The translations under genes were made by a program, and so were the position numbers. The notes under the pieces are model-generated. The model ran no database searches. It was not told the DNA's origin and saw only the letters and a list, made by a program, of their open reading frames with translations. Below are positions 13,067 through 30,572 of a stretch of 64,000 nucleotides of DNA, piece after piece. The first letter of the stretch is position 1; the number at the start of each line of letters is the position of its first letter. Location: positions 248,001 through 312,000 of the IMG/VR virus record IMGVR_UViG_3300033997_000243; one strand, written 5' to 3'.

Positions 13067-14152
13067 TTAGTCTGCCATATCGCCAAGTTCAGTTTTGATC
13101 TTACCGCCTTTAGGACTTCGTTTCTTACCAGAGTTTTTCGTTTCGGCCTGAGCCTCTGCCAATTCCAGTTCCAATTTTTCAAGATAAGCTGTTGACAGAT
13201 GTTGTCTTAAGTCATCGATGTCATCGCTTTCTTTAATATCACGAGGTATACGAATTTTGTTCTTTTTAGCAAACTTCAGAAGTTGCGCTTCTTCCATTTC
13301 CTGAATATCTTCAATCGTGGTTTCACGCTTGTAATCAAGTTCATCCAGTTCGTAATGATCTTCATCCGTTTCTTTATGAGCTTTTGCATAGCCACGGTCA
13401 ATATCACGAGCAATATCAACAAGGCTGTAAACTTGCTGATCAGAACTTTCGCGTTTAATTTTGTTGCGCTTAGCCAACGATCCTATGTCATCAATGTAAC
13501 CCATGACTCCATTGGTATTCAATTTTAATTCAAATGGAAGTTCAAGAGCTTTTACATTTTTAGCGGTCGGTCTGTCCAACTTGGGATCTACAACACGACC
13601 TTTGAATTCCATCTGACGGCGGAAAATAGAAAACTGAGAAACAGTAAATATATTCTTCTCTTTTCCTAAATTTTGGAAAGTCAGTACAATCTTCCCATCA
13701 TCACTACACACACGCACATAATCTTTATCAGCTGAAAGAATACGTGCTGTCATGAAATTCGATAAATAATCTGAAGCCAAAGTTCCACGGAAACGAACAT
13801 AAACTTTTTGCAAGAATGTATAACCTTGCTTGCGAGTAATATGTTCGTTTAAAATAGCTGCACCAAAAAGTCGTAACTGTCCATTATCGAATTCACGCAT
13901 AATATCGGCAAGCTCATAAAGTGAACTGCCATTTTTCTCAATGCTCTCGGCCAGAGCCACACTGTTGGGTTTAAAATTTTCACAGCTCGAAGAGTATTCA
14001 AAGCGACCTTGTTTAATGCAAGGCGTATCATCACCAGCAATCAACCGCTCTCGTGTGAGTCCAATGCACTCACCACAAGTTAGTTTTTCTTCTGTTATGA
14101 CTTTTATCTTTATCTGCGCTTTGTTTACTGATGTCTGTCTTTTTGTTGTCAT
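13067..14152 (-). CDS. hypothetical protein with N-terminal Cys cluster and C-terminal HeH/Rho-N-like module
   Basis: CGEC..C..C; IQEMEEAQLLKFAKKNKIRIP...DDLRQHL. Confidence 0.75.
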   Translation of the reverse strand: MTTKRQTSVNKAQIKIKVITEEKLTCGECIGLTRERLIAGDDTPCIKQGRFEYSSSCENFKPNSVALAESIEKNGSSLYELADIMREFDNGQLRLFGAAILNEHITRKQGYTFLQKVYVRFRGTLASDYLSNFMTARILSADKDYVRVCSDDGKIVLTFQNLGKEKNIFTVSQFSIFRRQMEFKGRVVDPKLDRPTAKNVKALELPFELKLNTNGVMGYIDDIGSLAKRNKIKRESSDQQVYSLVDIARDIDRGYAKAHKETDEDHYELDELDYKRETTIEDIQEMEEAQLLKFAKKNKIRIPRDIKESDDIDDLRQHLSTAYLEKLELELAEAQAETKNSGKKRSPKGGKIKTELGDMAD

Positions 14153-14621
14153 TTTTTAATCCTTTGGATCTCAACGTGTGATTGATACAATATAAGATCG
14201 TCTGCTCCATATTGGTTATCCCCGGAAGATCTTTTTTGAGTAACTCTAATCCTTGCCGAGTTGCTGGATCGGCATGTACCATAGGAAGTAAAGTCATTTT
14301 AGCATTGGAAGAAACTGGAGGACTCAATAATGCCTTGACCAAAATTTCTAACCAAGTTTTAGCTCTAAGTTCTGTCTCAGGATCTGCCCAAAATTTCCTT
14401 AAGGGTTTTGGGTTTTTAGCACCAATACGTGCAACTATAGCATCTGCGTGAGCATGAAGTGTTGTATGGCAAGCTCCATCAATAGGAATTTGCAAACTAT
14501 CACTACCACCTAACGATCTTGGAATAGTGTGGTGCCAATGTATATTGGCAAACCAGTTCATACAAATACAGCATAACTCACAGCCGTCGGCTCTTTTTAC
14601 CACTGGCAGTTTGTTTTCCAT
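14070..14621 (-). CDS. HNH endonuclease-like protein
   Basis: CCIC...HHTIPRSLGGSD...CHTTLH. Confidence 0.8.
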   Translation of the reverse strand: MENKLPVVKRADGCELCCICMNWFANIHWHHTIPRSLGGSDSLQIPIDGACHTTLHAHADAIVARIGAKNPKPLRKFWADPETELRAKTWLEILVKALLSPPVSSNAKMTLLPMVHADPATRQGLELLKKDLPGITNMEQTILYCINHTLRSKGLKNDNKKTDISKQSADKDKSHNRRKTNLW

Positions 14622-15963
14622 TTGAAACTCCTAAACTTTTATTTGAAAGCGGAAGTCCCCATGACAAAACTTTGATATTGCCTTTTGTTTGAGCATACAA
14701 CTTTTTATAGACGGCTGTTGGTACGATCCATGCCAAGGAAATATCGCTATTAGCAGGACTGGTAGCAAAATCATTTGACATTAAACTATATTCATGGCCG
14801 CGAGATCTAGCGTCATCAAGAAATTGATTAACGCGCTCAAAATAAACATTTGAGGTTTTCTTGTCAAGGAATCGAGCCTTGGAATCATAGATACTTTTAG
14901 CTTCTACTCCATGACGTTTCAAAATAGAGATCATCTTTTCAGAAGTATCTATTTTAACTTGAACCGATTTCAGTTCGGCTTCAAGTTTTTTACGTAATTC
15001 AGAGTCCAGAGTTCCAGTACGCTTTGCCCCTTCTTTTCTGTTATTTAGTTTTTCACGTTCGGTCAGAAGTTTACGTAACAAACTTTTTTCCGCTTTCATT
15101 GCAGACTTGTTTTTTGTTACGGCATCGGCAAACTTTGAATCGTCGTGTTTTGTAGCAATCAACAATTCGCTTTGACTTTTGCTAAACTGCAAAAGAATTT
15201 GATTAGGTAAAATTAAAGCAACATCACTGCTATCAGGGCCAGCAAAGCCAAGCGCATCGACACCAGTAAATATGTGACGTAAAAGTTTTGTGCTGCGTAA
15301 AGCAACATTTTCAAAGTTAACTGTAACAGGGCACTGCGTTGGTATTACAGCACTTCTGGAGAAATTTAATTTATCAGATTTTATTTTGCTGACTAATGCT
15401 TTGTGTACAGCTTGACTATGAACAGCCAATCTGTTTGTCACAAATTCATATTGAGCTTGAGAAAAATCGGCAATCTCTTCGTACTCCTCGACAGGTTCTG
15501 CCTTGGATTTTGAAGCACCAGAAACTTTTTTGTAGGATTCAACAAAAATGGCATGGCCAACTTCGTCGTCACTTACTTCCATTAAAAGATCTGGATTTTG
15601 CTCGATCCTTTTTATATGGGTCTGCGAAGAATCTTTTAGATCTTGCAATCTGTCAGACATTTCTGTTCTGATCAATTCACAAAATCTAGTGAGATTAATC
15701 TCACGATTTTCCAACGCATCCTTTAAAGAACGTATAGTGTTAGCTAAATACCGAGCAGGTTTTCGCTGTGCGGTAAATTTACGATCCCGCTTTGAGCTAG
15801 AATCGAAGTCAGCTAAAGCATCTATAGTAGATGATAGGTCAGCCAGTGTTTCACTAGCTTTAGCAAACTTTTTAGGTGTTGCAGCCTTTTTAATCAAATT
15901 GTCTGTTGAGCTAATGCTCGACATCAATGATTGAAGTACCGTCGCGTAAAGGACTTCTGACAT
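14578..15963 (-). CDS. coiled-coil hypothetical protein
   Basis: 461 aa ORF with heptad-rich segments. Confidence 0.8.
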   Translation of the reverse strand: MSEVLYATVLQSLMSSISSTDNLIKKAATPKKFAKASETLADLSSTIDALADFDSSSKRDRKFTAQRKPARYLANTIRSLKDALENREINLTRFCELIRTEMSDRLQDLKDSSQTHIKRIEQNPDLLMEVSDDEVGHAIFVESYKKVSGASKSKAEPVEEYEEIADFSQAQYEFVTNRLAVHSQAVHKALVSKIKSDKLNFSRSAVIPTQCPVTVNFENVALRSTKLLRHIFTGVDALGFAGPDSSDVALILPNQILLQFSKSQSELLIATKHDDSKFADAVTKNKSAMKAEKSLLRKLLTEREKLNNRKEGAKRTGTLDSELRKKLEAELKSVQVKIDTSEKMISILKRHGVEAKSIYDSKARFLDKKTSNVYFERVNQFLDDARSRGHEYSLMSNDFATSPANSDISLAWIVPTAVYKKLYAQTKGNIKVLSWGLPLSNKSLGVSNGKQTASGKKSRRL

Positions 15964-16018
15964 TGTGTTAATTTCCCTAATTTTCTGTTTGTTATAATGG
16001 GCTAGGCCCGAAAGGTGT

Positions 16019-16043
16019 AGAGGATTATAAATTATAATCCTCT
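16019..16043. terminator. perfect palindrome after topoisomerase A gene
   Basis: AGAGGATTATAA-A-TTATAATCCTCT. Confidence 0.5.
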
Positions 16044-16064
16044 TGCCTTTATCCTAAAGCAGCG

Positions 16065-17708
16065 TCAGTCTGCTTTTTTCTTGCGCTTCTTCTCAGACTT
16101 TTTAGTGTCTGCGATTGAAGCATTTACCATCCGTACATACTTATTTACAGATTCGGTCAAGGAAGAAGCGATACGAGGATTAGGATCTTTGTGATCGCGT
16201 TTCCATCCTTTAATGTCGGCAGTAGCAATTTTAATCTTGTCCTGTAGCGCTTTCAGTTCAAGTTTTGCCAGCCTACGCATTTTCAATTCCAAAATGAAAG
16301 TAGCTTCATCTTGAGGAATCTTCAATGTTTTTGCAGTGTAAGTATCTGGATCATCTTTGTCCAAAGCTTTTTTCATTACTTCCAAGATTTTATTCTTGTT
16401 GATAACAGCGTAGGACAATACGTTGTATTCCCACAAATCGCGTTCGCGTTTTGCAATAATGTTTTCCAGATAACGCTTTTCCAATTCCACACGATAGCGA
16501 ACCCAGTTTTTAATATAGGTCGCAAAGTTACAGTAAAGGAATTTAGCAGTTCCATCGACGTTGTTTATTGTAAGTCCTAAGTTATAGAACTCACTGCCAG
16601 TCAACATCTTACGAATTTTTTCAGCTAAATCAAAAAGGCCGTCATCTGACATTCCACGTTTTGGTACAACATAATAATATGCACCATAAGGGCCAGCGTT
16701 CGGACGTTTATCACCACAGTCACTTACCCAACGACTAACTTCGGGTAATTCTAAAATCTTATCACGTTTTTTAGCAACGCCATCTTCAGATGCGAAACCG
16801 GGAGAATAAGAAACAATTTCAACGATTTTATTTTTGTAATCAACTTGAACTTTCGGACAATATTTTATTGCCTTTGCTCTACCTGTTTCAATAAAGCTTG
16901 CAAGTTCTTCTGGTGGGCTAACGCAATCAGATCCAAAAGGAGCTTGAATTTTTAAATGCTTTACACAATCAGAAGATTTCAAATCGCCTTTTTCCAATAC
17001 AATTTGAATAAGTTTTGTAACGCCTTCAATTTCAAAAGCAGGATTACAAGCACGAACACCGTAGGCAATACCACCAGCATTTCCAATCAACAGCATTGTT
17101 GGAAGAAGCGAAGGCAAATACAACGGAATTTTTTCGCTGTCATCAAAGTTGTTTATACGCGGAACAACTTCAAGATAACCTTTATCCAAAAGAAAAAGTT
17201 TGCTGTAATCACTCAAACGCGCTTCAGTATAACGCTGAGCTGCCGCCATATCGAGTGGACTGCCAAAATTTCCTCTACCTTGAATAAGTTTTGGAATTGT
17301 ATTGGCTAACGTAACTAATGCACCATACGTTGCAGAGTCACCGTGAGGATGATACTTACCAATTGTATCACCAACAATACGCGCACACTTTTTAAAGTCA
17401 GAACCGAATAAATTCAGCTGAGACATTGCATAAATAATGTGGCGGTGAACTGGCTTTAATCCATCACGGAATTCTGGAACAGCACGATCTTGTACAACGT
17501 ATTCACCGTAATGAGTTAAATTTCTTTTTGCAAAGTTTGCCAAATCTTCTTTGACAATAGTTTTCATCAGTACAGTGGAAGGCAGTTTGAATTGATTAGG
17601 TTCAACAACTGCGGGTAAATTTTTCTTCGACTTTTTATGTTGTTTAATATCTCCCAACTCAGTCTTAGAAACTTTCTTTGTTTTTGCTGGCGGCTTTTTT
17701 GATTTCAT
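16065..17708 (-). CDS. gyrA: type IIA topoisomerase subunit A (GyrA/ParC-like, no C-terminal pinwheel)
   Basis: [36 protein letters not shown] catalytic Tyr. Confidence 0.93.
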
Positions 17709-17748
17709 TGTTTAGTTTACCAACTTTTTGTGTAAGCGAACAGGCCGG

Positions 17749-17807
17749 ATTATACCAAAATAAGGTATTGAAATAAACCCCTGATTTTTGACACACTTGG
17801 ATCAGTT
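17749..17807 (-). promoter_or_regulatory. class I promoter module (AACTGATCCAAGTGTGTCAAAAA-N30-TATAAT)
   Basis: Conserved repeat, TGGTATAAT extended -10, upstream of gyrA. Confidence 0.85.
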
Positions 17808-18232
17808 CATACTAAAGATGGTGTTCCTTTAGGTAACACTTCTTTTAAGAATGAAGTGAACTGAACTTGATCATACGGATTATTTGAACTCAAATAAGAA
17901 ACATATGCTCTTACAGAGTCAAGACCTAAAGTTGAAAGAGTTTTCTTTTCACTCAATTCATTAAGCAATGTATCTGTCAGAAATTTACTATTCTTACCCA
18001 ACCAATAAAGACCTGTAGTGTAAACACGGGAAACGCTACCAATAATATTTTGTGGAGGGCGTTTTATGAAAAATCCGTTCGCATCCACAATAGCTAAGGC
18101 CATACACTGCAATCTAGTCTCCAACAACTTTTTAGGATTGTCATTAACTTCAAGTTCAGCTTTTATCCATCGACAACTTTCTTCGACTACACCTTGAGCC
18201 ATATACATGAATACAATTTGTTTTTTAATCAT
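17807..18232 (-). CDS. hypothetical protein
   Basis: 141 aa ORF, GAGG RBS. Confidence 0.75.
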   Translation of the reverse strand: MIKKQIVFMYMAQGVVEESCRWIKAELEVNDNPKKLLETRLQCMALAIVDANGFFIKRPPQNIIGSVSRVYTTGLYWLGKNSKFLTDTLLNELSEKKTLSTLGLDSVRAYVSYLSSNNPYDQVQFTSFLKEVLPKGTPSLV

Positions 18233-18241
18233 GCAATTTCC

Positions 18242-18631
18242 TCAACAAATATTATGCAAACTATTTTGCGTAACTGGAAGCAAAGCAATACGTCTGCGAT
18301 AAGACTCTCTCGATCCATAATACTGAATCATACGCTTTCGCGCCAGACTTATTTTTAAAAGCTCGTCCCAATTCCAATCATCACCATCAAGAGAAGTTCT
18401 CTCAAACACATTCAATATAACTGAAGATATTGTTTTAGATTTTGTAGGCCAAACACTTTTTACGATTGTACCATCATTACTAAGTACAATCAGAGCGGCC
18501 CGTTTAATCTTTGTGTTGATAAATGAAAGTCGAACCCAAAACACAGTCAAACTATTATTTCGCATGTGATCGGGATTCATCTTTATTGGAATAAAGCTTA
18601 AGTCCATTAGAGCATAGTAGCGTTGTCCCAT
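18242..18631 (-). CDS. hypothetical protein
   Basis: 129 aa ORF, GAGG RBS. Confidence 0.75.
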   Translation of the reverse strand: MGQRYYALMDLSFIPIKMNPDHMRNNSLTVFWVRLSFINTKIKRAALIVLSNDGTIVKSVWPTKSKTISSVILNVFERTSLDGDDWNWDELLKISLARKRMIQYYGSRESYRRRIALLPVTQNSLHNIC

Positions 18632-18643
18632 TTCACGATCCTC

Positions 18644-20626
18644 TTAATCGTTGGAACTTAACCCCAACAATTGCCGTCTGGCAGAGGCATCTTCACCGAC
18701 AACTGATCTGTAAAACGCAAGATCTTCTTGAACTTTACCGTATTCAATTTGAATCAACTTTCTGTTGTTAATATCAAATGCTATGGCTTCAAGTAAATCT
18801 GCATCTGTCTCTCCCCAACCTTTTGCACGGAACACACTTCCCTTCGGAGCATTTTTTGGTAACTTAGCTAAACATTCTTCCATTGTGTTTCCGCTGTAAT
18901 GCACACCATTAACGAGTGCGTTATACAATTGAGCGTCAACAACAAACAAACGACCTTCTTTAATAAAGTCCGGCATAAGTTTATAGAAAAATGCGGTGAT
19001 AAGTACGTTAATGTGAGATCCATCAGCATCAGCATCAGCAAGCAACATTGCAACAGCAACTCGCAGATTCTTTGTACTGAATGTAGGATTATCAGCTTTA
19101 ACATCCAAACTTTTTATGTCAACTCCCAAACTGTTCAGCATATCTTGAATGCGGTCATTTGAAAGTAAGGCACTTAGACTGACGTTCAATGCGTTTGGAA
19201 TTTTACCGCCAAGTTTTAAAACTTCCTGATTAAAACCACGAGCATTTTTGGCAGTACCACCAGCCGAATCGCCTTCGACAAAATACAGCTCACGCTCATG
19301 CGGTTTACAATCTGGAGCTTCATAAAGTTTTATTGGCAGCTTACTTCCACCTTTTTTAACTTCGCTCATGCCTTTCATTGTTTTAGCAAGATCTTCACGG
19401 GAAGCCGCAACATCACTTGCGCGTTTTATAATCTGCTTGGCTAATGTTTTGTTCTTTGCAAAAAAATCGGTTAATGGTTGAGTCAGTAAATCACAAACTT
19501 CGTTATCGATTTTAGATACCAGTTTATCTTTTACCTGACCACTAAATTGAGCGCTGTTCATTTTCCAGTTGATAATAGCAACTGCGCCAACATAAAGATC
19601 TTCTGGCTTAAACTTACCTGCTTTTTTGGGCAGATAGTTTTTCAAAGCTTTTGACATGGCCGCACGGAAACCATTTACATGCGTACCATGATCTATTGTT
19701 GGACTACTATTTACATAACTTCTGAACAGATCACTGTCATAGTGATTAGACCATTGAATAGCAACTTTCAGGCTTGAGCCATCGAACTCGAATGGCTTAC
19801 CCAAAGGCTCTAAATCATGATCAGAAATTATTGAACTGACTACAGCACCCAAACCTTTATCATTGTAGAAAACCTGTTCTTTGTTTGTTTCAAGGTTTAG
19901 GAAACCAATATAAAGCTTGCTATTCATGGTACTCATGAACTTTAAATAATCAGCAAACTTTTGTTCTTCCAAAACAGCTTGGGTATATGTTTTAAGTTTT
20001 GAGGTACGACTAGCATCAACGCTTATCACGCTTTGATCTGGAACCAAGCGAATGATAGTGCCAAGTCGCTTAAACTTTTTCTTGAGAGGTAAAAGATAAC
20101 CAAACTTTTTCTTGAGGAAAGTGTCTGGAACCTTTTTAACCGGACTGGTTTCTTTTCCGCATGAAAAACTTTGGTAGTACCACTGATCTTCACGACAAGT
20201 CCAGACCTCAAGTTCTTTTGATAAAGCATTGACCGCAGAAATACCAACACCGTGCGTACCACCTGAAGTCTGATAAGCTTTTACATCAAATTTTCCGCCA
20301 GCATGAAGTTCAGTAAGAATTACTGTTAATGCGCTTACTTTTTTACCTTCAACTGTTTTCATTCCAACAGGAATACCTTGAGCGCAGTCGGCAAAAACGT
20401 ATTCACTTGTTTTGTTATTAAAGGCTACATAGATTGCGTTGTTGCGTCCAGCTTCGTATTCATCGCGGCTGTTTTCAACAGCTTCTTTGCCCATGCGATA
20501 CATCATTGAATCGCCAAGCTCACCCATGTACATACCAGCGTTTAATCTAACACCAGCTAAACCTTTGTGAACCTGAATACTATCTTCATCATAAGTATTT
20601 GCAGATTTTGCTTTTGCTTTAGCCAT
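18644..20626 (-). CDS. gyrB: type IIA topoisomerase subunit B (GyrB/ParE-like)
   Basis: EAVENSRDE, LHAGGKF, GGTHGVGISAVNALS, VEGDSAGG, DADADGSHI, KGWGE. Confidence 0.95.
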   Translation of the reverse strand: MAKAKAKSANTYDEDSIQVHKGLAGVRLNAGMYMGELGDSMMYRMGKEAVENSRDEYEAGRNNAIYVAFNNKTSEYVFADCAQGIPVGMKTVEGKKVSALTVILTELHAGGKFDVKAYQTSGGTHGVGISAVNALSKELEVWTCREDQWYYQSFSCGKETSPVKKVPDTFLKKKFGYLLPLKKKFKRLGTIIRLVPDQSVISVDASRTSKLKTYTQAVLEEQKFADYLKFMSTMNSKLYIGFLNLETNKEQVFYNDKGLGAVVSSIISDHDLEPLGKPFEFDGSSLKVAIQWSNHYDSDLFRSYVNSSPTIDHGTHVNGFRAAMSKALKNYLPKKAGKFKPEDLYVGAVAIINWKMNSAQFSGQVKDKLVSKIDNEVCDLLTQPLTDFFAKNKTLAKQIIKRASDVAASREDLAKTMKGMSEVKKGGSKLPIKLYEAPDCKPHERELYFVEGDSAGGTAKNARGFNQEVLKLGGKIPNALNVSLSALLSNDRIQDMLNSLGVDIKSLDVKADNPTFSTKNLRVAVAMLLADADADGSHINVLITAFFYKLMPDFIKEGRLFVVDAQLYNALVNGVHYSGNTMEECLAKLPKNAPKGSVFRAKGWGETDADLLEAIAFDINNRKLIQIEYGKVQEDLAFYRSVVGEDASARRQLLGLSSND

Positions 20627-20638
20627 TGGGATCTTTCC

Positions 20639-21510: not shown

Positions 21511-21978
21511 TTATTCAAAATCGAAGTCGTTATTTTTCTTTTTTGTAGAAGGCTTTTTGTCAGCTTTCTTGTCTGACTTGGCCGGAGCTTTTTTGTCAGC
21601 AGACTTTTTATCAGCTGGCTTTTTGTCAACTTTCTTGTCTGACTTGGCCGGAGCTTTTTTGTCAGCAGACTTTTTATCAGCTTTCTTATCCGCTTTGGCC
21701 GGAGCTTTTTTGTCAGCTTTTTTGTCAGCTTTCTTATCCGCTTTGGCCGGAGCTTTCTTATCGGCTACCGGAGCTTTTTTGTCAGCTTTGGCAGGAGCTT
21801 TTGCGGCAGGAGCTGGATTACCTGCTAAAGCTTCGGCTTGCTGTTTTGTAGCGGCAGCAACTGCTTCTGCTTGTTCAGCGGCTTTAACTAAAGCTTCTGC
21901 TTGTTTGCGTAAAGCAGCGGCTTGCTTTGTAGAAGCAGTTGCACTTTTGTTCAGTGCGGAAATAGCTTGTTTACTCAT
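21511..21978 (-). CDS. histone H1/AlgP-like Lys-Ala-Pro repeat protein
   Basis: Ala-rich helix, then tandem PAKADKK/KSADKK repeats, ends NNDFDFE. Confidence 0.8.
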   Translation of the reverse strand: MSKQAISALNKSATASTKQAAALRKQAEALVKAAEQAEAVAAATKQQAEALAGNPAPAAKAPAKADKKAPVADKKAPAKADKKADKKADKKAPAKADKKADKKSADKKAPAKSDKKVDKKPADKKSADKKAPAKSDKKADKKPSTKKKNNDFDFE

Positions 21979-22066: not shown

Positions 22067-22783
22067 TTAATCTTCTTCCCACTCTTCCTCTTCTTCCTCT
22101 TCTTCCTCTTCTTCCTCTTCCTCTTCTTCGTCAGAGGAATAGTTTTCTTCCAGCCACTCACGCAGAGTATCTTCGTTCTTCAGCGCCTTCTTAGGCGGCT
22201 CAAGATCGTTTTCTTTTGCGAAAGCCTTCATTTCTTTTAAATCCATTTCTTCAAAGTCTGGTTCTTCAGACTCTTCTTCCTCTTCTTCCTCTTCTTCGTC
22301 AGAGGAATAGTTTTCTTCCAACCACTCGCGCAGGTCATCTTCGTCTTTCAGAACTTTGGCAGGAACTTCCAGATCATTTTCTTTCACAAACTTTTTCAGT
22401 GCTTTGTGATCCATGTCCTCGAAGTCAGGAGAATCAGATTCTTCTTCCTCTTCTTCCTCTTCCTCTTCGGAATACTGCTCAGCTAAAAACTCGCGCAGGT
22501 CATCTTCATCTTTGATCTTTTTAGGGATCTCGATTTCGTTGTCTTTAGCAAACTTTTTCAGCTGCTTCAGATTCATTTCTTCAAAGTCTGGTTCATCAGA
22601 CTCTTCTTCCTCTTCGACTTCTTCATCCTTTTTGGATTTTTTGCCTTTGGAGGATTTACCGGCAGGAGCGCCTACAGCGGCAACAACGTCATCAGCTTCG
22701 ATAACACCTTCTTCAACACAAACTGTCAGCAATTCCAGTAACGCAGAAGCAACTGTTTTTCCGGCGGTCTTTTTCTTTGACAT
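22067..22783 (-). CDS. poly-Glu protein with three tandem HeH/Rho-N-like modules
   Basis: 3x PDFE(E/D)M.LK.LK.F.K.N.LE.P.K..K.ED.LRE(F/W)L separated by poly-E. Confidence 0.85.
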   Translation of the reverse strand: MSKKKTAGKTVASALLELLTVCVEEGVIEADDVVAAVGAPAGKSSKGKKSKKDEEVEEEEESDEPDFEEMNLKQLKKFAKDNEIEIPKKIKDEDDLREFLAEQYSEEEEEEEEEESDSPDFEDMDHKALKKFVKENDLEVPAKVLKDEDDLREWLEENYSSDEEEEEEEEESEEPDFEEMDLKEMKAFAKENDLEPPKKALKNEDTLREWLEENYSSDEEEEEEEEEEEEEEEEWEED

Positions 22784-23514: not shown

Positions 23515-23522
23515 ATTTACAG
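23515..23522 (-). promoter_or_regulatory. class II candidate promoter CTGTAAATA followed by 5' leader hairpin (23474-23509)
   Basis: AAAACTGTAAATA, then GGCAGGTC/GACCTGCC stem. Confidence 0.6.
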
Positions 23523-23540
23523 TTTTAGCAGACCAGCAGC

Positions 23541-25691
23541 TTACTCAATGACAATCATTGAGTTTGCAGACCACGGCAACAGGTAAGAAATTGAATCAAA
23601 ATCAGATAACAGAGTGTGAACAATGTCGGTTTCGACTTCTGACTCAGTTTCTTCTTCTGAATCAATTTCTTCTTCTGTTTCTTCAACTTCTTCGCTTTCG
23701 TACTCTTCATCCAATTCACCATCGAATTCAAATTCAGAGTCCTGCATTTCAGCGGCCTGTTCTGCTTTTTCACGAACATATTCAACTAACTGTTCGCGGC
23801 TATAGTAGCCTGTTTTGTTAAACAGATCAACAACAGCACGAGATTTTAACAGCAGATCTAAATCGGCTGCAAAAGTAACCATGATTTCAATCGACTCTTC
23901 TGTCGCTTCATCAGCAATTGCTTGAGCAGATTTTTTTAGTGCCGTCAGATTTCCGCGCAACTTTTCTGAATCACGGCTACGGCCCAACATTGGGACGTTC
24001 AGAGATACGAAAAAGTTGTACACGATTTCATTTTCAGTATCACCGACTGAAGGTTGAACATTGATAGAAGCTAAATCGCTTAAATCAATACCTTCTGGTA
24101 ATACGTTGTCATCGGTTAAACCGTAGACCAAAGCTTTTGCAACTTTTTGCAGGTTCTCACAAATACCGTAAACGGTTTGATGAACAGCAATTGTTGGGCC
24201 GCAGTAAACGCGCTGTTTCATGTTAAACTCTGCAACCATTTGCGATAATGATTGCATTGGATCTACAAACCAGCCCATATTTTTGTCATCGGTTTCACGA
24301 CGGCGTAACGGATGATTGGCACACATTGCATTTTCACCAATGTAAATTGCGGCCAGTTCTTCCTGATCGATTTCACGAGTTTGCTGTGTGCCAGCCGATA
24401 AAACCAGAATAATGCGAGAAGAAGTTGTAAGTTCAAAGTGCGGAACTTCTGAACCTAAATAATCTACTTCTTCTAAGTGACGAATCACTTCGGCATTCAA
24501 AGCTTCAGCTTCAGCTTCAGCTTGCATTTCTGCTTCGATTTCGGCATCCATTTCAGCCAGTTGTTCTTCGGTGAATTCGATCTGAACACCATCTTCTTCA
24601 TCTTCATCAGAAACATAGTTTTCAGGATCGTCGCGTTCAACTTCTTCGACTTCTTCTTCATGAGTTTCAAAGTCGTCAGTTTCGTCAGAAGTTTCTGATT
24701 CATCTTCGGCTTCTACTTCAGCCAAAGCTTTGTTTTCAGCAACGGCCAGAACGTCAGAATACTGGCCGCGTAATTCTTCACGAATTTCTGAAGTACCTAA
24801 GTCAGAAATTTCTGAAAGCTGATCAGCTGTTAAGCTAATGTGCTGTTCAAAATGAGAAAGCAAGGCTTTGCGATCCATAGAGTCCAGAACTTCCAGAAAT
24901 TTATCTTCGTCACCGTTGGTAGCATGTTCCAGAAGTTCATCAAAATCTGAATCATCAACTTTTTCAGTTCCGGTGATTTCCTGCATAACCTGCGCTGTTG
25001 AAACAGTTTCGTTTTCTGCAAAATCAAATTCGCTCGACTCTTCGGCTTCAAAATCGCTGGCAGTCGGCACAGCATCAACAACTACAGTTGTACTTTCATC
25101 TGAATCTTCAGCATAAATTTTGTTGATTGCAGCAATCAACATTTGACGAGCTTCGTCTGAAGTTTCAGCGTTTTCTGTAGCTTCATCGGCATAACCGCCT
25201 AAGTGAATAAGCAGATCGGCCAGACCATCATCAGAAAGTTGTTCAACTTTTGAAGGGTCTGAGTAATCAACCATCGGATCGAATTCAGCAAAATCAGCTT
25301 CATCAAAAGTAGAGTTTGCCGAATTTCCGCCAGATAAAGCGGCCAACAACGGATCAATTTCGGCACGAAGTTTGTTGCGAGATTCAGCACCGTTTTTAAT
25401 ACCTTTCAACAAAGCTTCCGCATTACCACCTAAATGATTCAACAGATCTTTGTGGCCTTTCAAACTTAACTCTTCCAGATTCACCGGATTGGTGTAATCA
25501 ACAGATGGATTGAATTGCTTTTTCTCTGGAGCAGGAATTTTAACTTCGTTAACGTACATTGCGGTTTCTCCAACATTTGTTTTTGGTTCAGCCACAACAG
25601 GCGCTGAGTTCGGCACTACTTTAGATTGTTGCATAGAAGCAGCGGCAGCTGCACTAACTTTAGGCAACAACTTATGTTTTGGTTTTAGCAT
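23541..25691 (-). CDS. large acidic protein with internal repeat
   Basis: 716 aa; repeat FNPSVDYTNP..LEELS..G..DLL.HLGG / FDPMVDYSDP..VEQLS..G..DLL.HLGG; Glu/Asp tracts. Confidence 0.85.
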   Translation of the reverse strand: MLKPKHKLLPKVSAAAAASMQQSKVVPNSAPVVAEPKTNVGETAMYVNEVKIPAPEKKQFNPSVDYTNPVNLEELSLKGHKDLLNHLGGNAEALLKGIKNGAESRNKLRAEIDPLLAALSGGNSANSTFDEADFAEFDPMVDYSDPSKVEQLSDDGLADLLIHLGGYADEATENAETSDEARQMLIAAINKIYAEDSDESTTVVVDAVPTASDFEAEESSEFDFAENETVSTAQVMQEITGTEKVDDSDFDELLEHATNGDEDKFLEVLDSMDRKALLSHFEQHISLTADQLSEISDLGTSEIREELRGQYSDVLAVAENKALAEVEAEDESETSDETDDFETHEEEVEEVERDDPENYVSDEDEEDGVQIEFTEEQLAEMDAEIEAEMQAEAEAEALNAEVIRHLEEVDYLGSEVPHFELTTSSRIILVLSAGTQQTREIDQEELAAIYIGENAMCANHPLRRRETDDKNMGWFVDPMQSLSQMVAEFNMKQRVYCGPTIAVHQTVYGICENLQKVAKALVYGLTDDNVLPEGIDLSDLASINVQPSVGDTENEIVYNFFVSLNVPMLGRSRDSEKLRGNLTALKKSAQAIADEATEESIEIMVTFAADLDLLLKSRAVVDLFNKTGYYSREQLVEYVREKAEQAAEMQDSEFEFDGELDEEYESEEVEETEEEIDSEEETESEVETDIVHTLLSDFDSISYLLPWSANSMIVIE

Positions 25692-25699
25692 AATGTCCT

Positions 25700-26977
25700 C
25701 TAGGCTTTTTGCCAGTACATTTTAGGTTTTGAAATTCTCACAACTGGCTGAGTTCCATTTTTGCCCTTTCTGCTTTCGAGACTGGAACTCTGAGCTGTTT
25801 TTGATTCACAACAAACAAAACCCAAACTTTTTAGTTTGCTCATAATCTGAGTGTGTTTAACGCTCGGTGGAGTGCATGTGATCTCATTTGAATTTGAGCA
25901 AAGAAATAAATCTAATGCTTTAAAACAAAATAAATTCACTGGGTCATTTGCTTTCGCAACTTCACGAGCTTTTTTACGCAATTCACGATTGGCTTCTCGC
26001 TTTTCTTCAAAAGCATCAATCAACTTTTTAGCGGCTTCAGCCAAATTAATCTGGCGTCGTGTTGGCCGTTTTATTTGATCGAACTCTGAAAGATAAAGCA
26101 CTGCCTTTGCTTTCTTTTCACGATACTTATCTAAGAATCCAATATATGGACTTTTTCGATCCGCACGTTCACGATAGATCTCAGCTAAACGATCAACATC
26201 GTGAATAATCCATTCATGAATCACCGAAGCATAATCCATTTCAGGATCGTATTCGTTGCGCTCAAGTTTGCCGTAAACAACATAATACTGCTCACTTTTA
26301 CCAAAAGCACCGTCAGGTAAATTCGGTGGAACAATGTTTGAAGCTTGATACGTAAAATCAACAAACTTTTCTTTTTGTTTGGAGTCTACGTAATTCAGAA
26401 AAGCAGAAACTAACTTAGTCTGACCAGCAACTTTTTTATAAACGCAGTACATATCATAAGCGTCAGTTTGAACACGAACAAAACTTTTACCTAAACAAGA
26501 TTTTGCTGGCCCATCTACTATTTTGAACTGAGAAATACTCTTCATCAATTTTAAATAGTGATCAGAAGGAACATAAGTCACACTGCAATCTAAAGCGGAG
26601 CGCATGTGTTCTTTTAAAACTGATCTTAGATCTTTTTTCGTTAATACGGAATCAGGCAACTGAACCGCATCATAACCAGCAACTTCATTCCAAAGCATTT
26701 TATTTATATTGCTTTGGGGCAAAGCTAAACCGCATTCGTAAAGTAATGCAACTTTTTCACAAGCAACATAACTACCACGACAAATTTGATTGTACAAATT
26801 AATAAGGTGCGAACGTGATATACGCAACATGAAATGATGTTCGCTGCTTGCGCTACCTCGCGCTACCCAACGATCACCAGACAAAGGCACAGCAGTAGTA
26901 ATCAAACAATTTGTTAAAGCGTTTGGCGCTTGTTCATGCAAAATGCTTGAATAGATCAACTTTGTGTGCTGATTCAT
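25700..26977 (-). CDS. hypothetical protein
   Basis: 425 aa ORF. Confidence 0.8.
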   Translation of the reverse strand: MNQHTKLIYSSILHEQAPNALTNCLITTAVPLSGDRWVARGSASSEHHFMLRISRSHLINLYNQICRGSYVACEKVALLYECGLALPQSNINKMLWNEVAGYDAVQLPDSVLTKKDLRSVLKEHMRSALDCSVTYVPSDHYLKLMKSISQFKIVDGPAKSCLGKSFVRVQTDAYDMYCVYKKVAGQTKLVSAFLNYVDSKQKEKFVDFTYQASNIVPPNLPDGAFGKSEQYYVVYGKLERNEYDPEMDYASVIHEWIIHDVDRLAEIYRERADRKSPYIGFLDKYREKKAKAVLYLSEFDQIKRPTRRQINLAEAAKKLIDAFEEKREANRELRKKAREVAKANDPVNLFCFKALDLFLCSNSNEITCTPPSVKHTQIMSKLKSLGFVCCESKTAQSSSLESRKGKNGTQPVVRISKPKMYWQKA

Positions 26978-26992
26978 AAATTTTCCAGATTA

Positions 26993-27014
26993 GGCGGTAG
27001 GAATTCCTACCGCC
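26993..27014. terminator. perfect 22-bp palindrome / terminator candidate
   Basis: GGCGGTAGGAATTCCTACCGCC. Confidence 0.55.
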
Positions 27015-27069
27015 AATTTACTTGGTTAAAGATTCTTCCTCTTCGTCATCTTCCTCTTAAGCTAGAGGA

Positions 27070-28536
27070 TTATTCGCTCTCGAACTCGAAGTCCTCTTCG
27101 CCAGTAGTTTCTTCAGCGTCAACCAACTTTTCAATCAGTAAAGCTTTCAACGCTTTGATTTTACGGAAGTGACGGATGTTCTGCGAAACTTTACCAACTT
27201 TATCGCTGTATTGTTTTGCAATTTCCAGTAAAGAATCGAAGTCGCGGATTTCGTTGATTTCTTCGGCAGTAATGCCTTCCTCAACTTCTTCTTCCTCCTC
27301 TTCCTCTTCTTCAGTTTCTTCAAAGAACAGGCTGACCACGTATTCGATCAGTTCTTCTTTATCCAAACCTTCGATGTAATCAACAGTAGCTTCGTAATCT
27401 TCGCTACCTTCTTCACCTAAATCAACAGCACCAAAGATGAAAGTGCGGATTTCTGATTCAGAGTAATCGGCCAGTGCGTCAGCGGCTTCTTCAGCAGATT
27501 CACAGCCTTCTAAAAGATTTGAATCATCTTCAGATTCTTCTTCCTCTTCTTCGGCTTCGTCCAGCTCGTCCAGTTCATCAACTTCTTCTTCCTCCAGTTC
27601 ATCAACTTCTGTTTCCTCTTCTTCAGAGAAAGGAACAAAGTCTAAACTCTCAAAGTCTTTTGAACCAACATCTTTTGGTTCACCGTTTTCATCTTCCAGA
27701 ATCAAACGAACTGGATCACGTTGCATACCAGCAAAGTAGTAAGTTTTACCATCTTCGTCAACTAAGCGTGAACCGATGACAAACTCTTCCATTTCTTCTT
27801 CGTCCAGTTGCAGTGCGGCAAACACACGTTGAGCAACTTTTGAATTCGCGGCAACCTGACTTTCCCACAGACCTTCTTCAACCAGAGATAAAGTTTCTTC
27901 GCTGAAGTTAAATTCTACAGCTTCTTCCTCTTCTTCCAGTTCTTCCAGTTCTTCTTCCAACTCTTCCTCTTCTTCAGGAATGTCAAAAGTTAAATCTGAC
28001 ATGCAAAGAATAACGGTCGGATCGCCACCTTCTTCTTCGATTTGTGCGCCAGTGTTTACGCTAACGAAATTGTCAAAGCGTTTTGGCAAATGTTCACGCA
28101 GAATTTCTTCAACCGCTGAACGAATTTCACCTGACTGTTCAGTAACATTTTCGATAGTAATGGCATCAACTTCTTCCAGTTCTTCCACAACTTTGGTGGC
28201 AGACTTACGTGCAGGTTTTGTTTCAGCAACTTTTTTGCCAGCTGGTTTTTTGTCGGCTTTGGCCGGAGCTTTTGCTGGAGCTTTTTTGTCGGCTTTGGCC
28301 GGAGCTTTTTTAACTTTTGGCAAAGTCACATAACCAGAACCAACTTTTGCACCGTCAACAGGCTGATCGATTTCTTCAAACTTTTGACCATCACGTACAA
28401 CACAATTTGCGGCAACGCCTTTACGACGACCTTGCAGTTTGTAACCAGTTTTAGTTGTCTCTGTGATAGTGTCACGCGAACCATCTAACAGAGTAATTTT
28501 TTTACCGACTAAAGTTTCATTAGGAGTTACTTTCAT
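27070..28536 (-). CDS. bipartite basic/acidic protein (PAKADKK repeats, poly-E, ends EDFEFESE)
   Basis: Start moved to ATG 28536 (MKVTP) with AAGGA RBS, downstream of CTGTAAAT motif. Confidence 0.85.
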   Translation of the reverse strand: MKVTPNETLVGKKITLLDGSRDTITETTKTGYKLQGRRKGVAANCVVRDGQKFEEIDQPVDGAKVGSGYVTLPKVKKAPAKADKKAPAKAPAKADKKPAGKKVAETKPARKSATKVVEELEEVDAITIENVTEQSGEIRSAVEEILREHLPKRFDNFVSVNTGAQIEEEGGDPTVILCMSDLTFDIPEEEEELEEELEELEEEEEAVEFNFSEETLSLVEEGLWESQVAANSKVAQRVFAALQLDEEEMEEFVIGSRLVDEDGKTYYFAGMQRDPVRLILEDENGEPKDVGSKDFESLDFVPFSEEEETEVDELEEEEVDELDELDEAEEEEEESEDDSNLLEGCESAEEAADALADYSESEIRTFIFGAVDLGEEGSEDYEATVDYIEGLDKEELIEYVVSLFFEETEEEEEEEEEVEEGITAEEINEIRDFDSLLEIAKQYSDKVGKVSQNIRHFRKIKALKALLIEKLVDAEETTGEEDFEFESE

Positions 28537-28568
28537 TTCAACTTTCCTTACATTGGATTCAAATAAAT

Positions 28569-28576
28569 ATTTACAG
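28569..28576 (-). promoter_or_regulatory. class II candidate promoter motif CTGTAAAT
   Basis: 33 nt upstream of ATG 28536. Confidence 0.55.
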
Positions 28577-28625
28577 AACGGTCGGAGCAGGATTGCCCCA
28601 CACATTAATCAAACAAACTTTTTTG

Positions 28626-29231
28626 TTAGAAACTGATTACAGTATCTGACTCAACGCGAACATCTTTGCCTTTGGCATTTTTACAGATTAAGCGGCAAAC
28701 GCCACCACGCACTGAAACACCGTAAACCAGAAGTTCCTGATCATCTACGAATATCGACTTGTTGAACATTGATAATGCAACGCCGAATTCTTTAGCTTTG
28801 GCTAAATTCGCCTTGAACGAATCTTTAGTTTCGCTCAAACCTGCTTCACGATAAACTTTTCGTAACTCTGTGGATGGAGCAACGAACTGCGCTACCGCTT
28901 GCTTTTTACTTGCTTTGCCAGTCACTGTTTTATTTACAGTTTTGGCAGTACCAGAACCTTTCAGATCAACCAACTTTTCTTTTATCAAAGTTGAAAGTTG
29001 ATCTACGGCAGAAAGAACACGAGTTAATGATTTTGCATCTAAGTTGTCGATGTTGTTTACTTCGATGCCAGCACTTTTTAAAGTTGACCTTACCGCAACA
29101 GGAATACTTGCTTTTGGTTTTTTAACCGGAGTATCTTTTGCAGGAAGTTTAGCACTTGGTTTAACTTTACCAGAAGGTTTTACACTTACTGGAGCTTTGT
29201 TTTCACCTTTCTTTGGAAACTTTTTAATCAT
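28626..29231 (-). CDS. basic Lys-rich protein
   Basis: Start moved to ATG 29231 (MIKKFPKK) with GAGG RBS. Confidence 0.8.
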   Translation of the reverse strand: MIKKFPKKGENKAPVSVKPSGKVKPSAKLPAKDTPVKKPKASIPVAVRSTLKSAGIEVNNIDNLDAKSLTRVLSAVDQLSTLIKEKLVDLKGSGTAKTVNKTVTGKASKKQAVAQFVAPSTELRKVYREAGLSETKDSFKANLAKAKEFGVALSMFNKSIFVDDQELLVYGVSVRGGVCRLICKNAKGKDVRVESDTVISF

Positions 29232-29301
29232 GGTCGAGATCCTCAAATGATTGATAAACTTTTTACTTTGATTGGGCGATATTGCCCTAACCAATGTACA
29301 C

Positions 29302-29350
29302 ATTATACTAAAAGTGGCCGCTCATAACAACCACTATTTTTGACACACTT
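29302..29350 (-). promoter_or_regulatory. class I promoter module with embedded terminator hairpin
   Basis: GTGTGTCAAAAA-N29-TATAAT; TTGTTA-17-TATAAT; AGUGGUUGUU/AGCGGCCACU-UUU. Confidence 0.88.
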
Positions 29351-29413
29351 TGTTTAGTAACAAACTTTTTATCGGGAACGAAACTTCAGACAAACTTTCT
29401 CTGTTGTTTCGAT
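29311..29413 (-). ncRNA. candidate ~100 nt sRNA between tandem promoter modules
   Basis: No plausible ORF between promoter 29420 and terminator hairpin 29311-29336; internal stems GAAAC/GUUUC, CAGA/UCUG. Confidence 0.4.
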
Positions 29414-29419
29414 GGTGTA

Positions 29420-29477
29420 ATTATATCAAAAGTGGCCGCTCATAACAACCACTATTTTTGACACACCTCGATCAGTT
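29420..29477 (-). promoter_or_regulatory. class I promoter module (tandem duplicate)
   Basis: Near-identical copy of 29302-29350. Confidence 0.88.
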
Positions 29478-29479
29478 GA

Positions 29480-29731
29480 CTATCGTTGAGCTTTACGTGC
29501 CTTCTTTTGTACAGCACGTTTTGCTCTACGTAAACTTTTTGGAATCAACTTTTTCGTTGCACGATAGCGAGTGGCTGTACCTTCATCGTGCCAAGAATCT
29601 TGCTGCGGCTCACTGTAATCATCTTTTAAACTTTTTACAATGCGCTTTACTTCAGCATCAATATTATCTTCGGCTATCGCAATCTGATTAAATTGAGAAG
29701 CGACGATTGCACCAACTAATTCTTTTCTCAT
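29480..29731 (-). CDS. small basic hypothetical protein
   Basis: 83 aa, AAGGA RBS. Confidence 0.75.
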   Translation of the reverse strand: MRKELVGAIVASQFNQIAIAEDNIDAEVKRIVKSLKDDYSEPQQDSWHDEGTATRYRATKKLIPKSLRRAKRAVQKKARKAQR

Positions 29732-29795
29732 ATAAATATCCTTTTGCTAAAGCTTGCGTAAAAGGCGACTTAATAAAATCACCTTTGCCAAAACT

Positions 29796-30572
29796 TTATT
29801 CTATATCAATTCCGTTTATAACAGCATCCAGATATTCTTGCATAGAAGATTGACTGGTATAAATACCGTGATCAATGCTTGCACCTTTATCCGGCAGATT
29901 TTCACGAGCGTAACGCTGCAAAGCTGGCAAACTCATTTCCTGAAAATCGACAAAGTTTTCTACAGGTAAATCAGCATCATCTTCTTCCATATCTTCTTCA
30001 TCTTCACGAAGAATACGAACGCTGTAACTGCAATTTGTAAAAAGTTGGCCGTCAACCATTATTGAATTTGGGGTTATAGGTTGAATTTTGAATTCGTCGG
30101 CAAATGAGAATTCAACCCTGTACGGAACGTCAACAACAAAAACGGAAAACTTATCTTTCAAAGAATTAATATGCAGCCCAAGTTTAGGTAACTGAATAAA
30201 CTTTTCAACACGTTTTACCATGCCGTAGTTAAACAGCAAACGTGCATCAGTAACCACACCAAGATCTTCACGAATTTCATAACCTGAATTCATAAAGTCA
30301 GGCGCACGACCTTTTGCAGCTGTTTGTGCTAAAAATTCTACATAAGCATCAACACATTCGCTGGAAACCAAAAGTTTGCATTCCTGAGTAGTGTCGATAA
30401 CAACATGAACAGGTGCTTTGTTTGCGTAGATTGCGTTTCGAGTCAAATACTCAACAACAGCTTTTTGATATTTTGTTGAACGCATTTGTTCAGGAATGGT
30501 TAAACCTTTTTCTTCCGCGAAAGTTAAAAGGTCTGACATACTAGCGTTGTTTAACTCTTGTATACTTTTCAT
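29796..30572 (-). CDS. hypothetical protein with terminal HeH/Rho-N-like modules
   Basis: LNNASMSDLLTFAEEKGLTIP and FQEMSLPALQRYAREN. Confidence 0.8.
   Translation of the reverse strand: MKSIQELNNASMSDLLTFAEEKGLTIPEQMRSTKYQKAVVEYLTRNAIYANKAPVHVVIDTTQECKLLVSSECVDAYVEFLAQTAAKGRAPDFMNSGYEIREDLGVVTDARLLFNYGMVKRVEKFIQLPKLGLHINSLKDKFSVFVVDVPYRVEFSFADEFKIQPITPNSIMVDGQLFTNCSYSVRILREDEEDMEEDDADLPVENFVDFQEMSLPALQRYARENLPDKGASIDHGIYTSQSSMQEYLDAVINGIDIE

What the first reader, a model, noticed from the sequence alone, without database searches (positions are those of the whole stretch)
13067..30572. A ~40 aa Rho-N/HeH-like module reused in at least three, possibly five, proteins
Seen: consensus F.EM.L..L..FAK.N.I.IP......DDLR..L occurs three times in 22067-22783, once at the C-terminus of 13067-14152 and at both ends of 29796-30572. 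Weaker copies are in 23541 (LDSMDRKALLSHF) and 27070 (INEIRDFDSLLEIAKQY). Known: helix-extended-helix (Rho-N/SAP/LEM) modules tether proteins to nucleic acids or partners. Inference: the multivalent sticker domain of the proposed scaffold.
Basis: partly seen in the sequence, partly recalled or inferred. Interest (0 to 1): 0.6.

Follow-up and report, generated by a model that had tools for sequence, protein, structure and literature searches.

The report
Acidic SAP/Rho-N modules in jumbo phage
A ~42-residue helix-extended-helix module of the known SAP/Rho-N type really is reused six times in three proteins of a 320-kb phage's DNA-replication region. It belongs to a widespread, unusually acidic branch that elsewhere often forms the tail of phage single-stranded-DNA-binding proteins, so the finding is sound but fairly ordinary.

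Summary
The window lies in a 319.5-kb jumbo phage with direct terminal repeats. The six main copies are real:
- three in p238 (22067-22783), a 168-bp tandem triplication;
- one near the C-terminus of p361 (13067-14152);
- one at each end of p258 (29796-30572).

Leave-one-out HMMs and profile-profile tests support them (E 8e-6 to 5e-8; shuffled control 1.8).

AlphaFold gives helix / 11-residue loop / helix (pLDDT 88). The best structural matches are SAP-like, T4 endonuclease VII C-terminal, Rho N-terminal and LEM domains (Z 4.5-6.3). The window copies miss Pfam cut-offs. An exhaustive profile search found 599 clusters, and among 145 top proteins 34 carry Rho_N and 34 SAP, on the module residues in every case checked.

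The branch is unusual: 93% of 332 copies are net negative, they usually come 2-5 in tandem on Asp/Glu linkers, and the commonest recognised partners are phage SSBs (DUF669 20, gp32 6).

The weak copies fare worse. The p511 C-terminus is marginal. The flagged p716 site sits in a 5-helix bundle, although p716 has two other Rho-N-like units.

The fold call is supported; the 'scaffold sticker' role is untested. My best guess is a protein-docking unit of the replication machinery.

The parts
22067..22783 (-). p238: 238-aa protein, pI 4.06, 41% Asp+Glu. It has a conserved ~40-aa N-terminal segment, a Lys-rich patch, then three modules separated by poly-Glu linkers.
   Evidence: orthologues P0001-P0003 with 2-3 copies
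22469..22591 (-). p238 module copy 1 (residues 65-105)
   Evidence: folded (pLDDT 88.3)
22304..22429 (-). p238 module copy 2 (residues 119-160)
   Evidence: tandem repeat of period 168 bp
22136..22261 (-). p238 module copy 3 (residues 175-216)
13067..14152 (-). p361: N-terminal domain of PHROG 17701 (residues 10-271), conserved in the replication blocks of PaBG, NCTB and Y3-type jumbo phages, plus one module near the C-terminus.
   Evidence: the PaBG (210 aa) and NCTB (256 aa) relatives have no module
13181..13312 (-). p361 module copy (residues 281-324)
   Evidence: found by the p238-only model at E 8.4e-6; E 1.2e-13 with the wider profile, of which this copy is itself a training member
29796..30572 (-). 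p258: unknown central domain flanked by a module at each end. It is an accessory gene: present in relatives L013 and L014, absent from the syntenic position in L004 and L005.
30441..30572 (-). p258 N-terminal module copy (residues 1-44)
   Evidence: hhalign E 9.2e-6, 36 columns; Pfam Rho_N E 0.044; window scan
29817..29951 (-). p258 C-terminal module copy (residues 208-252). Helix 1 matches well; the loop and helix 2 have diverged.
   Evidence: hhalign E 5.2e-8, 19 columns; top of the window scan
27115..27261 (-). p511 C-terminal candidate copy (residues ~449-497). Marginal: possibly a degenerate module.
25098..25283 (-). p716 unit 2 (residues 137-198). The predicted fold resembles the Rho N-terminal domain.
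   Evidence: AlphaFold pLDDT 83-90; Rho 1a62 residues 1-47 at Z 5.8, rmsd 2.0; weak in-register hhalign E 0.005
25335..25508 (-). p716 unit 1 (residues 62-119), an internal duplicate of unit 2
   Evidence: BLASTP 41% identity over 59 residues, E 6e-15; same helix pattern in the model
It is part of a five-helix bundle (247-324), not a free-standing module.

Best explanation
SHOWN. The repeat is a small, independently folding helix / extended-loop / helix domain. It belongs to a diverged, net-acidic branch of the SAP/Rho_N (HeH) superfamily. Tandem duplication spread it within p238, and domain shuffling placed it on p361 and on both ends of p258. All three genes lie in the DNA-replication block of a jumbo phage. 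In other, mostly uncultured, phages the same module comes 2-5 in tandem on Asp/Glu-rich linkers. There its commonest recognised partner is the OB fold of a phage single-stranded-DNA-binding protein.

INFERRED. The module is a protein-docking unit of the replication and recombination machinery, doing what the acidic C-terminal tails of SSBs do, which is to recruit partner proteins. Contact would be through the one conserved non-acidic surface: the Lys-rich extended loop (profile positions 25-30) and the Arg at the start of helix 2 (position 36). Several copies on flexible acidic linkers would add avidity and reach. On this reading p238 is a free-standing tail with three docking units, and p361 and p258 are client proteins that carry one or two units. 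The partner is not identified.
For: Homology of the copies.

Fold: AlphaFold pLDDT 88.3, helix 10-19, loop 20-30, helix 31-44.

Structural neighbours: CDNF C-terminal SAP-like domain in complex with BiP (Z 6.3), T4 endonuclease VII residues 110-155 (6.1), SLX4 SAP with MUS81 (5.5), classical SAP domains (about 5.1), Rho 1a62 residues 1-45 (5.0), LEM domains (4.5-4.8). Several of the best matches are protein-binding SAP-like domains.

Family: 599 clusters at E<=1e-3. Of 145 top proteins, 34 have Rho_N (best 4.6e-16), 34 SAP (1e-17), 18 SAP_new25 and 14 Ish1. In all five proteins checked the Pfam hit lies inside a module, for example P0023 Rho_N 117-143 at 49.5 bits inside module 115-157.

Acidity: every one of the 21 copies in A1 has net charge -2 to -11. 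Across 332 copies the mean is -4.9 and 93% are negative; linkers are 35% Glu and 22% Asp.

Conserved basic loop and Arg36.

Partners: DUF669 in 20 of 145 proteins and gp32 in 6. DUF669 is an experimentally shown OB-fold SSB with an acidic, flexible C-terminal region (PMC13687109). P0026 (gp32-like plus four modules) lies between a family-A DNA polymerase and a RecA-like recombinase.

Window context: DnaB-like helicase, GyrA- and GyrB-like genes, SSB and UvsX.
Against: - No partner was identified and no binding was tested.
- Most characterised members of the superfamily contact nucleic acids, and the conserved Lys-rich loop plus Arg36 could equally be a phosphate-binding surface.
- The structural Z-scores (5-6) are modest, and the tool warns that such values are common for small helical models.
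- The link to SSB tails is by position and composition only.
- Only 26 of the 145 top proteins have a recognisable SSB domain; most of the others have no recognised partner domain.
Confidence: 0.45

Rival explanations
1. A nucleic-acid-binding SAP domain. The Lys-rich loop and Arg36 contact the DNA backbone, and tandem copies give multivalent, salt-sensitive tethering of replication proteins to duplex DNA. The acidic linkers would act as an auto-inhibitory or tuning element.
For: - The module belongs to a superfamily whose classical members bind DNA or RNA; SAP, Rho N-terminal and Ku70 SAP domains are among the structural matches.
- The only conserved basic surface lies in the extended loop and at the start of helix 2, which is where SAP domains contact DNA (my own knowledge, not tested here).
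- All recognised partner domains act on DNA: DUF669, gp32 and YebC.
- The genes sit in a replication block.
Against: - Net charge is negative in 93% of 332 copies, mean -4.9 on about 45 residues.
- The flanking linkers are 57% Asp/Glu.
- p238 as a whole has pI 4.06, which should repel DNA.
Confidence: 0.25
2. The modules are multivalent stickers that cross-link neighbouring low-complexity proteins into a scaffold or condensate. The candidates are the Lys/Ala/Pro-rich basic proteins p155, p173 and p225 and the acidic proteins p716 and p511.
For: - Acidic proteins (p238, p716, p511, p258; pI 4.1-4.6) alternate with basic ones (p155, p173, p225; pI about 10) in one conserved gene block.
- p238 has three copies.
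- p716 has two Rho-N-like units of its own.
Against: - No evidence of any scaffold.
- The module's wider distribution is on SSB-type proteins, not structural ones.
- p258 is an accessory gene missing from two relatives that keep the rest of the block.
- The p716 site that was meant to link it into the network is not a module.
Confidence: 0.12
3. There is no specific ligand. p238 is an acidic DNA mimic or decoy, or simply a solubilising spacer, and the folded modules only give the polyanion its shape.
For: Extreme acidity: 41% Asp+Glu, pI 4.06. Many very acidic phage proteins are DNA mimics (my own knowledge, not tested here).
Against: - The hydrophobic core and a specific basic loop with Arg36 are conserved across 332 copies from hundreds of clusters.
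- Length changes between samples fall in the low-complexity spacers, not in the modules, wherever contigs covered them.
- The module also occurs singly on non-acidic p361 (pI 6.9).
Confidence: 0.08

Closest known systems
Pfam Rho_N (PF07498) and SAP (PF02037), with the related HeH/LEM-type families Ish1, SAP_new25 and HeH
   Same: - About 40 residues forming two helices joined by an extended loop.
- Structural matches to Rho 1a62 residues 1-45, several SAP domains and LEM domains.
- Relatives of the module carry Rho_N and SAP hits on the module residues, above the Pfam cut-offs in most cases checked.
   Different: - The window's own copies stay below every Pfam cut-off; the best is Rho_N at 18 bits against 24.9.
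- An Asn takes the place of the usual Gly at the end of helix 1 (the Gly is from my own knowledge of SAP and Rho_N sequences).
- The domain is net acidic.
- It usually occurs in tandem on Asp/Glu linkers.
Phage SSBs with module arrays as their tail (DUF669- or gp32-like OB fold followed by 2-5 modules; examples P0004-P0007, P0020, P0026)
   Same: The same module, the same acidic linkers and the same tandem layout as p238, in a replication context. DUF669 proteins are SSBs with an acidic, flexible C-terminal region (PMC13687109).
   Different: - p238 has no OB fold. The phage's own SSB (60259-61290) is a PaBG-type protein whose tail alternates acidic and Lys-rich stretches and has no module.
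- That paper does not describe folded SAP-like units in the tail.
C-terminal domain of T4 endonuclease VII (PDB 1e7d, residues 110-155), the source of the PHROG 3281 'endonuclease VII' label
   Same: Second-best structural match: Z 6.1, rmsd 2.1, 44 residues. PHROG 3281 matches p238 in three stretches at E 3.6e-15.
   Different: - Only profile positions 41-103 of PHROG 3281 and only the C-terminal domain of EndoVII are matched.
- No nuclease domain is present in p238, p361 or p258.
- In EndoVII the C-terminus of one subunit packs against the N-terminus of the other (PMC10956419).
Protein-binding SAP-like domains: the CDNF/MANF C-terminal domain with BiP, and SLX4 SAP with MUS81
   Same: Best and fifth-best structural matches (Z 6.3 and 5.5). 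They show that this fold can serve as a protein-docking unit.
   Different: Eukaryotic proteins with 17% identity, and single copies rather than arrays. The similarity is of fold only.

Membership tests
SAP/Rho_N/HeH (helix-extended-helix) superfamily | About 35-45 residues: two helices joined by an extended loop, packed on a small hydrophobic core | tested here: met
   AlphaFold model of p238 copy 1 with a 21-copy alignment: pLDDT 88.3, helices 10-19 and 31-44, loop 20-30. Core positions are conserved across 332 copies.
SAP/Rho_N/HeH (helix-extended-helix) superfamily | The window's own copies reach the curated cut-off of a Pfam model of the superfamily | tested here: not met
   Best hits are Rho_N at 18.0 bits (cut-off 24.9) and HA at 23.4 (28.4) for p238, and Rho_N at 14.2 for p258. 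Per-copy hits are all below cut-off.
SAP/Rho_N/HeH (helix-extended-helix) superfamily | Homology by linkage: proteins found by the module profile carry Pfam hits to the superfamily on the module residues | tested here: met
   Of 145 proteins, 34 have Rho_N (best 4.6e-16) and 34 SAP (1e-17). Coordinates coincide in all five proteins checked (P0019, P0021, P0023, P0024, P0028); four are above the cut-off and P0028 is just below at 22.3 bits.
SAP/Rho_N/HeH (helix-extended-helix) superfamily | Structural similarity to solved members | tested here: met
   Z 4.0-6.3 to CDNF/MANF, SLX4, Tho1, PIAS1, Hcc-1 and Ku70 SAP domains, Rho 1a62 and emerin/LAP2 LEM. These scores are modest, and Foldseek gave no E<=0.001.
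SAP/Rho_N/HeH (helix-extended-helix) superfamily | Binding of nucleic acid or of a defined partner | not testable with these tools
   Composition only: copies are net acidic, with one conserved basic loop and Arg36.
Rho transcription termination factor | An N-terminal helix bundle followed by a cold-shock-type RNA-binding domain and a RecA-type ATPase | tested here: not met
   No such domains appear in p238, p361 or p258. Only residues 1-45 of Rho are matched.
Phage SSB with a module array as its tail (DUF669 or gp32 type) | An N-terminal OB-fold SSB domain | tested here: not met
   No DUF669 or gp32 hit in p238, p361 or p258. The genome-wide searches for both families were blank, but so were the tool's control genomes, so those two searches say nothing.
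Phage SSB with a module array as its tail (DUF669 or gp32 type) | Two or more modules in tandem separated by Asp/Glu-rich linkers | tested here: met
   p238 has three copies with poly-Glu linkers, the same layout as P0004-P0007 and P0020-P0028.
T4 endonuclease VII (the PHROG 3281 label) | An N-terminal zinc-binding nuclease domain | tested here: not met
   The PHROG match covers only profile positions 41-103, and the structural match covers only EndoVII residues 110-155.

The most novel reading that the evidence does not exclude
Acidic SAP-like arrays are an unrecognised kind of folded, multivalent SSB tail in phages. On this reading p238 is such a tail cut loose from its OB fold, acting in trans as a hub or decoy that recruits, or competes for, the partners of the replication and recombination machinery in this jumbo-phage lineage.
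Probability: 0.15. Interest if true: 0.55.

Novelty: new member of a known kind. Interest (0 to 1): 0.3.

Why it matters
It gives a fold and a family to parts of three otherwise unannotated proteins in the replication block of an uncultured jumbo phage, and it explains a misleading 'endonuclease VII' PHROG label.

The more general point is that hundreds of phage protein clusters carry tandem, net-acidic SAP/Rho-N units on poly-acidic linkers, often behind an SSB fold. SSB tails are usually described as disordered acidic peptides. Folded docking units in that position would be a modest but testable addition to how phage replisomes are thought to be organised. I found no description of this in six completed literature searches; those cover open-access papers only.

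Tried and rejected
- **PDB sequence search with the module profile:** only designed helical repeats at E >= 0.07.
- **Foldseek against PDB:** no hit at E <= 0.001. The domain is too small, though TM was 0.66-0.73 to SAP-type domains.
- **BLAST against cultured phages:** nothing for the region's DNA, for p238, or for the module arrays of P0020 and P0026.
- **Related loci in viral contigs:** only a 99%-identical contig. The record behind L004 is not held, so its p361 orthologue could not be examined.
- **ESM Atlas:** no usable lead for the p361 N-domain or the p258 central domain.
- **Pfam on the p716 units and the p511 C-terminus:** nothing.
- **Genome-wide search for gp32 and DUF669:** blank, but the tool's control genomes were blank too, so no inference was drawn.
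- **Laying contigs of four runs:** contigs break at the repeats, so module copy number between samples could not be judged, and contigs cannot show expression.
- **Complex prediction:** not run, because I have no defined partner to propose.
- **Chance similarity of the six main copies:** rejected.
- **Membership of the Rho or endonuclease VII protein families:** rejected.


Full report
**Setting.** The window is bases 248001-312000 of a 319,518-bp virus record with direct terminal repeats, rated complete. All genes between 12 and 33 kb are on the minus strand. The block is a DNA-replication region. By ascending window coordinate it contains a DnaB-like helicase (10086-11453), p376, p361, an HNH protein, p461, a GyrA-like (16065-17708) and a GyrB-like (18644-20626) gene, and then a run of unannotated proteins that includes p238, p716, p511 and p258. 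The phage's SSB (60259-61290) and an intein-bearing UvsX-like recombinase (57946-60177) lie further on. The nearest cultured relatives of individual genes are PaBG, NCTB and Erwinia Y3-type jumbo phages. No cultured phage matches the region at the DNA level.

- A model from p238 alone finds the p361 copy at domain E 8.4e-6 among 2,818 ORFs of the whole genome.
- It finds p258 only at E 0.05-0.09, through helix 1 of the C-terminal copy.
- It never finds p716 or p511.

A wider profile of 22 copies, with the acidic flanks trimmed and p258 excluded, scores p258 at full-sequence E 9e-4. The best hit in a shuffled database is 1.8.

With the p258 orthologues P0013 and P0014, profile-profile comparison gives E 9.2e-6 for the N-terminal copy over 36 columns and 5.2e-8 for the C-terminal copy over 19 columns.

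As a matched control I cut 14 orthologue families of the region into 198 windows of 75 columns and scored each against the module profile. The two ends of p258 rank first (E 1e-6 to 2e-5), and none of the 11 control proteins reaches the top 25. So the six main copies in three proteins are real and homologous. No other copy exists in the genome.

**The two weaker copies.** The p511 C-terminus comes next in the window scan at E about 1e-3. Six sequences in a favourable alignment give E 5.6e-5 over 40 columns, probability 66%. However, purely acidic stretches of p511 score almost as high in the scan (17.6 against 19.5), and no Pfam model sees the segment. I call it marginal.

The flagged p716 site scores E about 2e-3. 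I folded p716 residues 55-325 with three orthologue segments (mean pLDDT 71.4, folded parts about 80-90). The model has three helical units separated by disordered acidic linkers. The flagged site lies inside the third unit, a five-helix bundle (residues 247-324) whose structural neighbours are generic helical domains.

The second unit (residues ~146-197) is different. It matches Rho residues 1-47 (Z 5.8, rmsd 2.0), the EndoVII C-terminal domain (4.7), the emerin LEM domain (4.3), SLX4 SAP and YqbF, which is much the same set of folds that the p238 module matches. Unit 1 (residues 62-119) is a clear duplicate of unit 2 (41% identity, E 6e-15). These units occur only in p716 and align to the module profile in register but weakly (E 0.005).

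**What the module is.** The window copies stay below every Pfam cut-off. The sub-threshold hits do cluster on related families: Rho_N, Ish1, SAP_new25, HA and DUF6887.

AlphaFold on p238 copy 1 with a 21-copy alignment gives a confident model: pLDDT 88.3, helix 10-19, an 11-residue extended loop, helix 31-44. Foldseek E-values mean little for 45 residues. The wider structural search lists the following:

| Match | Z |
|---|---|
| CDNF C-terminal SAP-like domain | 6.3 |
| T4 endonuclease VII residues 110-155 | 6.1 |
| SLX4 SAP | 5.5 |
| Classical SAP domains | about 5.1 |
| Rho residues 1-45 | 5.0 |
| PIAS1 | 4.9 |
| LEM domains | 4.5-4.8 |
| Ku70 SAP | 4.0 |

These scores are modest, and the tool warns that such values are common for small helical models.

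The decisive evidence is by sequence. An exhaustive profile search of 1.84 billion representatives found 599 clusters at E <= 1e-3 and 107 at <= 1e-10. Of 145 top proteins, 34 carry Rho_N (best 4.6e-16), 34 SAP (1e-17), 18 SAP_new25 and 14 Ish1. In the five proteins I checked, the Pfam hit lies inside a module, and four of the five are above the curated cut-off. The module is therefore a diverged branch of the SAP/Rho_N family. The PHROG label 'endonuclease VII' reflects only the C-terminal domain of that enzyme.

**What is unusual about this branch.**
- All 21 copies in alignment A1 have net charge -2 to -11.
- Across 332 copies the mean is -4.9 and 93% are negative.
- Of the 146 proteins in which copies were counted, 127 have two to five, and the linkers are 35% Glu and 22% Asp.
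- The column profile keeps a hydrophobic core and one basic surface: the extended loop (positions 25-30, 36-52% Lys/Arg) and Arg at position 36 (75%). Nearly everything else exposed is acidic.
- The commonest recognised partner domains are phage SSBs: DUF669 in 20 proteins and gp32 in 6.

A 2026 paper shows that a DUF669 protein is an OB-fold SSB with an acidic, flexible C-terminal region (PMC13687109). One gp32-type fusion lies between a DNA polymerase and a RecA-like recombinase. In the window, the phage's own SSB has a tail of alternating acidic and Lys-rich stretches without the module, so p238 is a free-standing array. The p361 relatives in PaBG (210 aa) and NCTB (256 aa) lack the module, and p258 is missing from two syntenic relatives. 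The module is evidently mobile between proteins.

**Mechanism.** Shown: the fold, the family, the tandem acidic architecture, and the association with DNA-metabolism proteins. Inferred: what it binds. I favour protein docking (0.45) for three reasons.
- The domain is net acidic.
- It occupies the position of an SSB tail, which in E. coli SSB, T4 gp32 and T7 gp2.5 recruits partner proteins (established knowledge, not tested here).
- Several of the best structural matches are protein-binding SAP-like domains.

The main rival is direct DNA contact through the basic loop (0.25). A non-specific polyanion role (0.08) is hard to square with the conserved surface.

**Novelty.** The domain family is known, and Pfam annotates many of the relatives. 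I found no description of acidic SAP-like arrays as phage SSB tails in the searchable literature, which covers open-access papers only. I rate the finding a new member of a known kind, with moderate-to-low interest.

**Occurrence.** Near-identical sequence is present in subsurface and wastewater metagenomes from two studies. Between samples the only length changes seen are in-frame and lie in the low-complexity spacers.

Noticed in passing
window 25098-25283 and 25335-25508 (p716 residues 137-198 and 62-119): Two duplicated units (41% identity, E 6e-15) whose predicted fold resembles the Rho N-terminal domain. The more distant orthologues (L004, L005) have one unit, while the closer one (L013) has two.
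   Followed up: yes
window 57946-60177: The UvsX-like recombinase is 743 aa, against 501 aa in PaBG. The PaBG match is split at residue 326/327 by an insertion of about 240 aa that starts with Cys and ends in His-Asn followed by Ser, as an intein would.
   Followed up: partly
L004 12122-17268 and 18184-20747, compared with window 16065-20626: In the relative L004 the GyrB-like and GyrA-like genes are interrupted by inteins (Pfam Intein_splicing, LAGLIDADG, HNH), with a gene on the opposite strand between the GyrB pieces. The window's copies (660 and 547 aa) have no insertions.
   Followed up: no
window 60259-61290: The phage's PaBG-type SSB (343 aa) ends in a tail of about 90 residues that alternates acidic runs with Lys-rich runs. 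This is a different tail design from the SAP-like arrays.
   Followed up: partly
window 21511-21978 (p155); also p511 residues ~98-135 and the N-termini of p173 and p225: Lys/Ala/Pro-rich repeats resembling histone H1, with DNA-level tandem arrays at 21551-21801. These proteins have pI about 10 and alternate with very acidic neighbours (pI about 4.1). One wastewater sample has a net 39-nt in-frame deletion in the p155 repeat.
   Followed up: partly
window, just after 22600 (p238 acidic linker before copy 1): All four other samples examined carry a 9-nt in-frame insertion (three extra Glu codons). The linker length varies, while no length change was seen in the parts of the modules that the contigs covered.
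   Followed up: partly
window 29796-30572 (p258) and 29480-29731: p258 is absent from the syntenic position in relatives L004 and L005 but present in L013 and L014, so it behaves as an accessory insertion. The 83-aa gene beside it also has a counterpart in L013 and L014, and tblastn against L004 and L005 returned no match for it.
   Followed up: partly
window 14070-14621: An HNH-motif ORF (183 aa) overlaps the start of p361 by 83 nt and the end of p461 by 44 nt. NCTB has a 196-aa gene at the same position.
   Followed up: no
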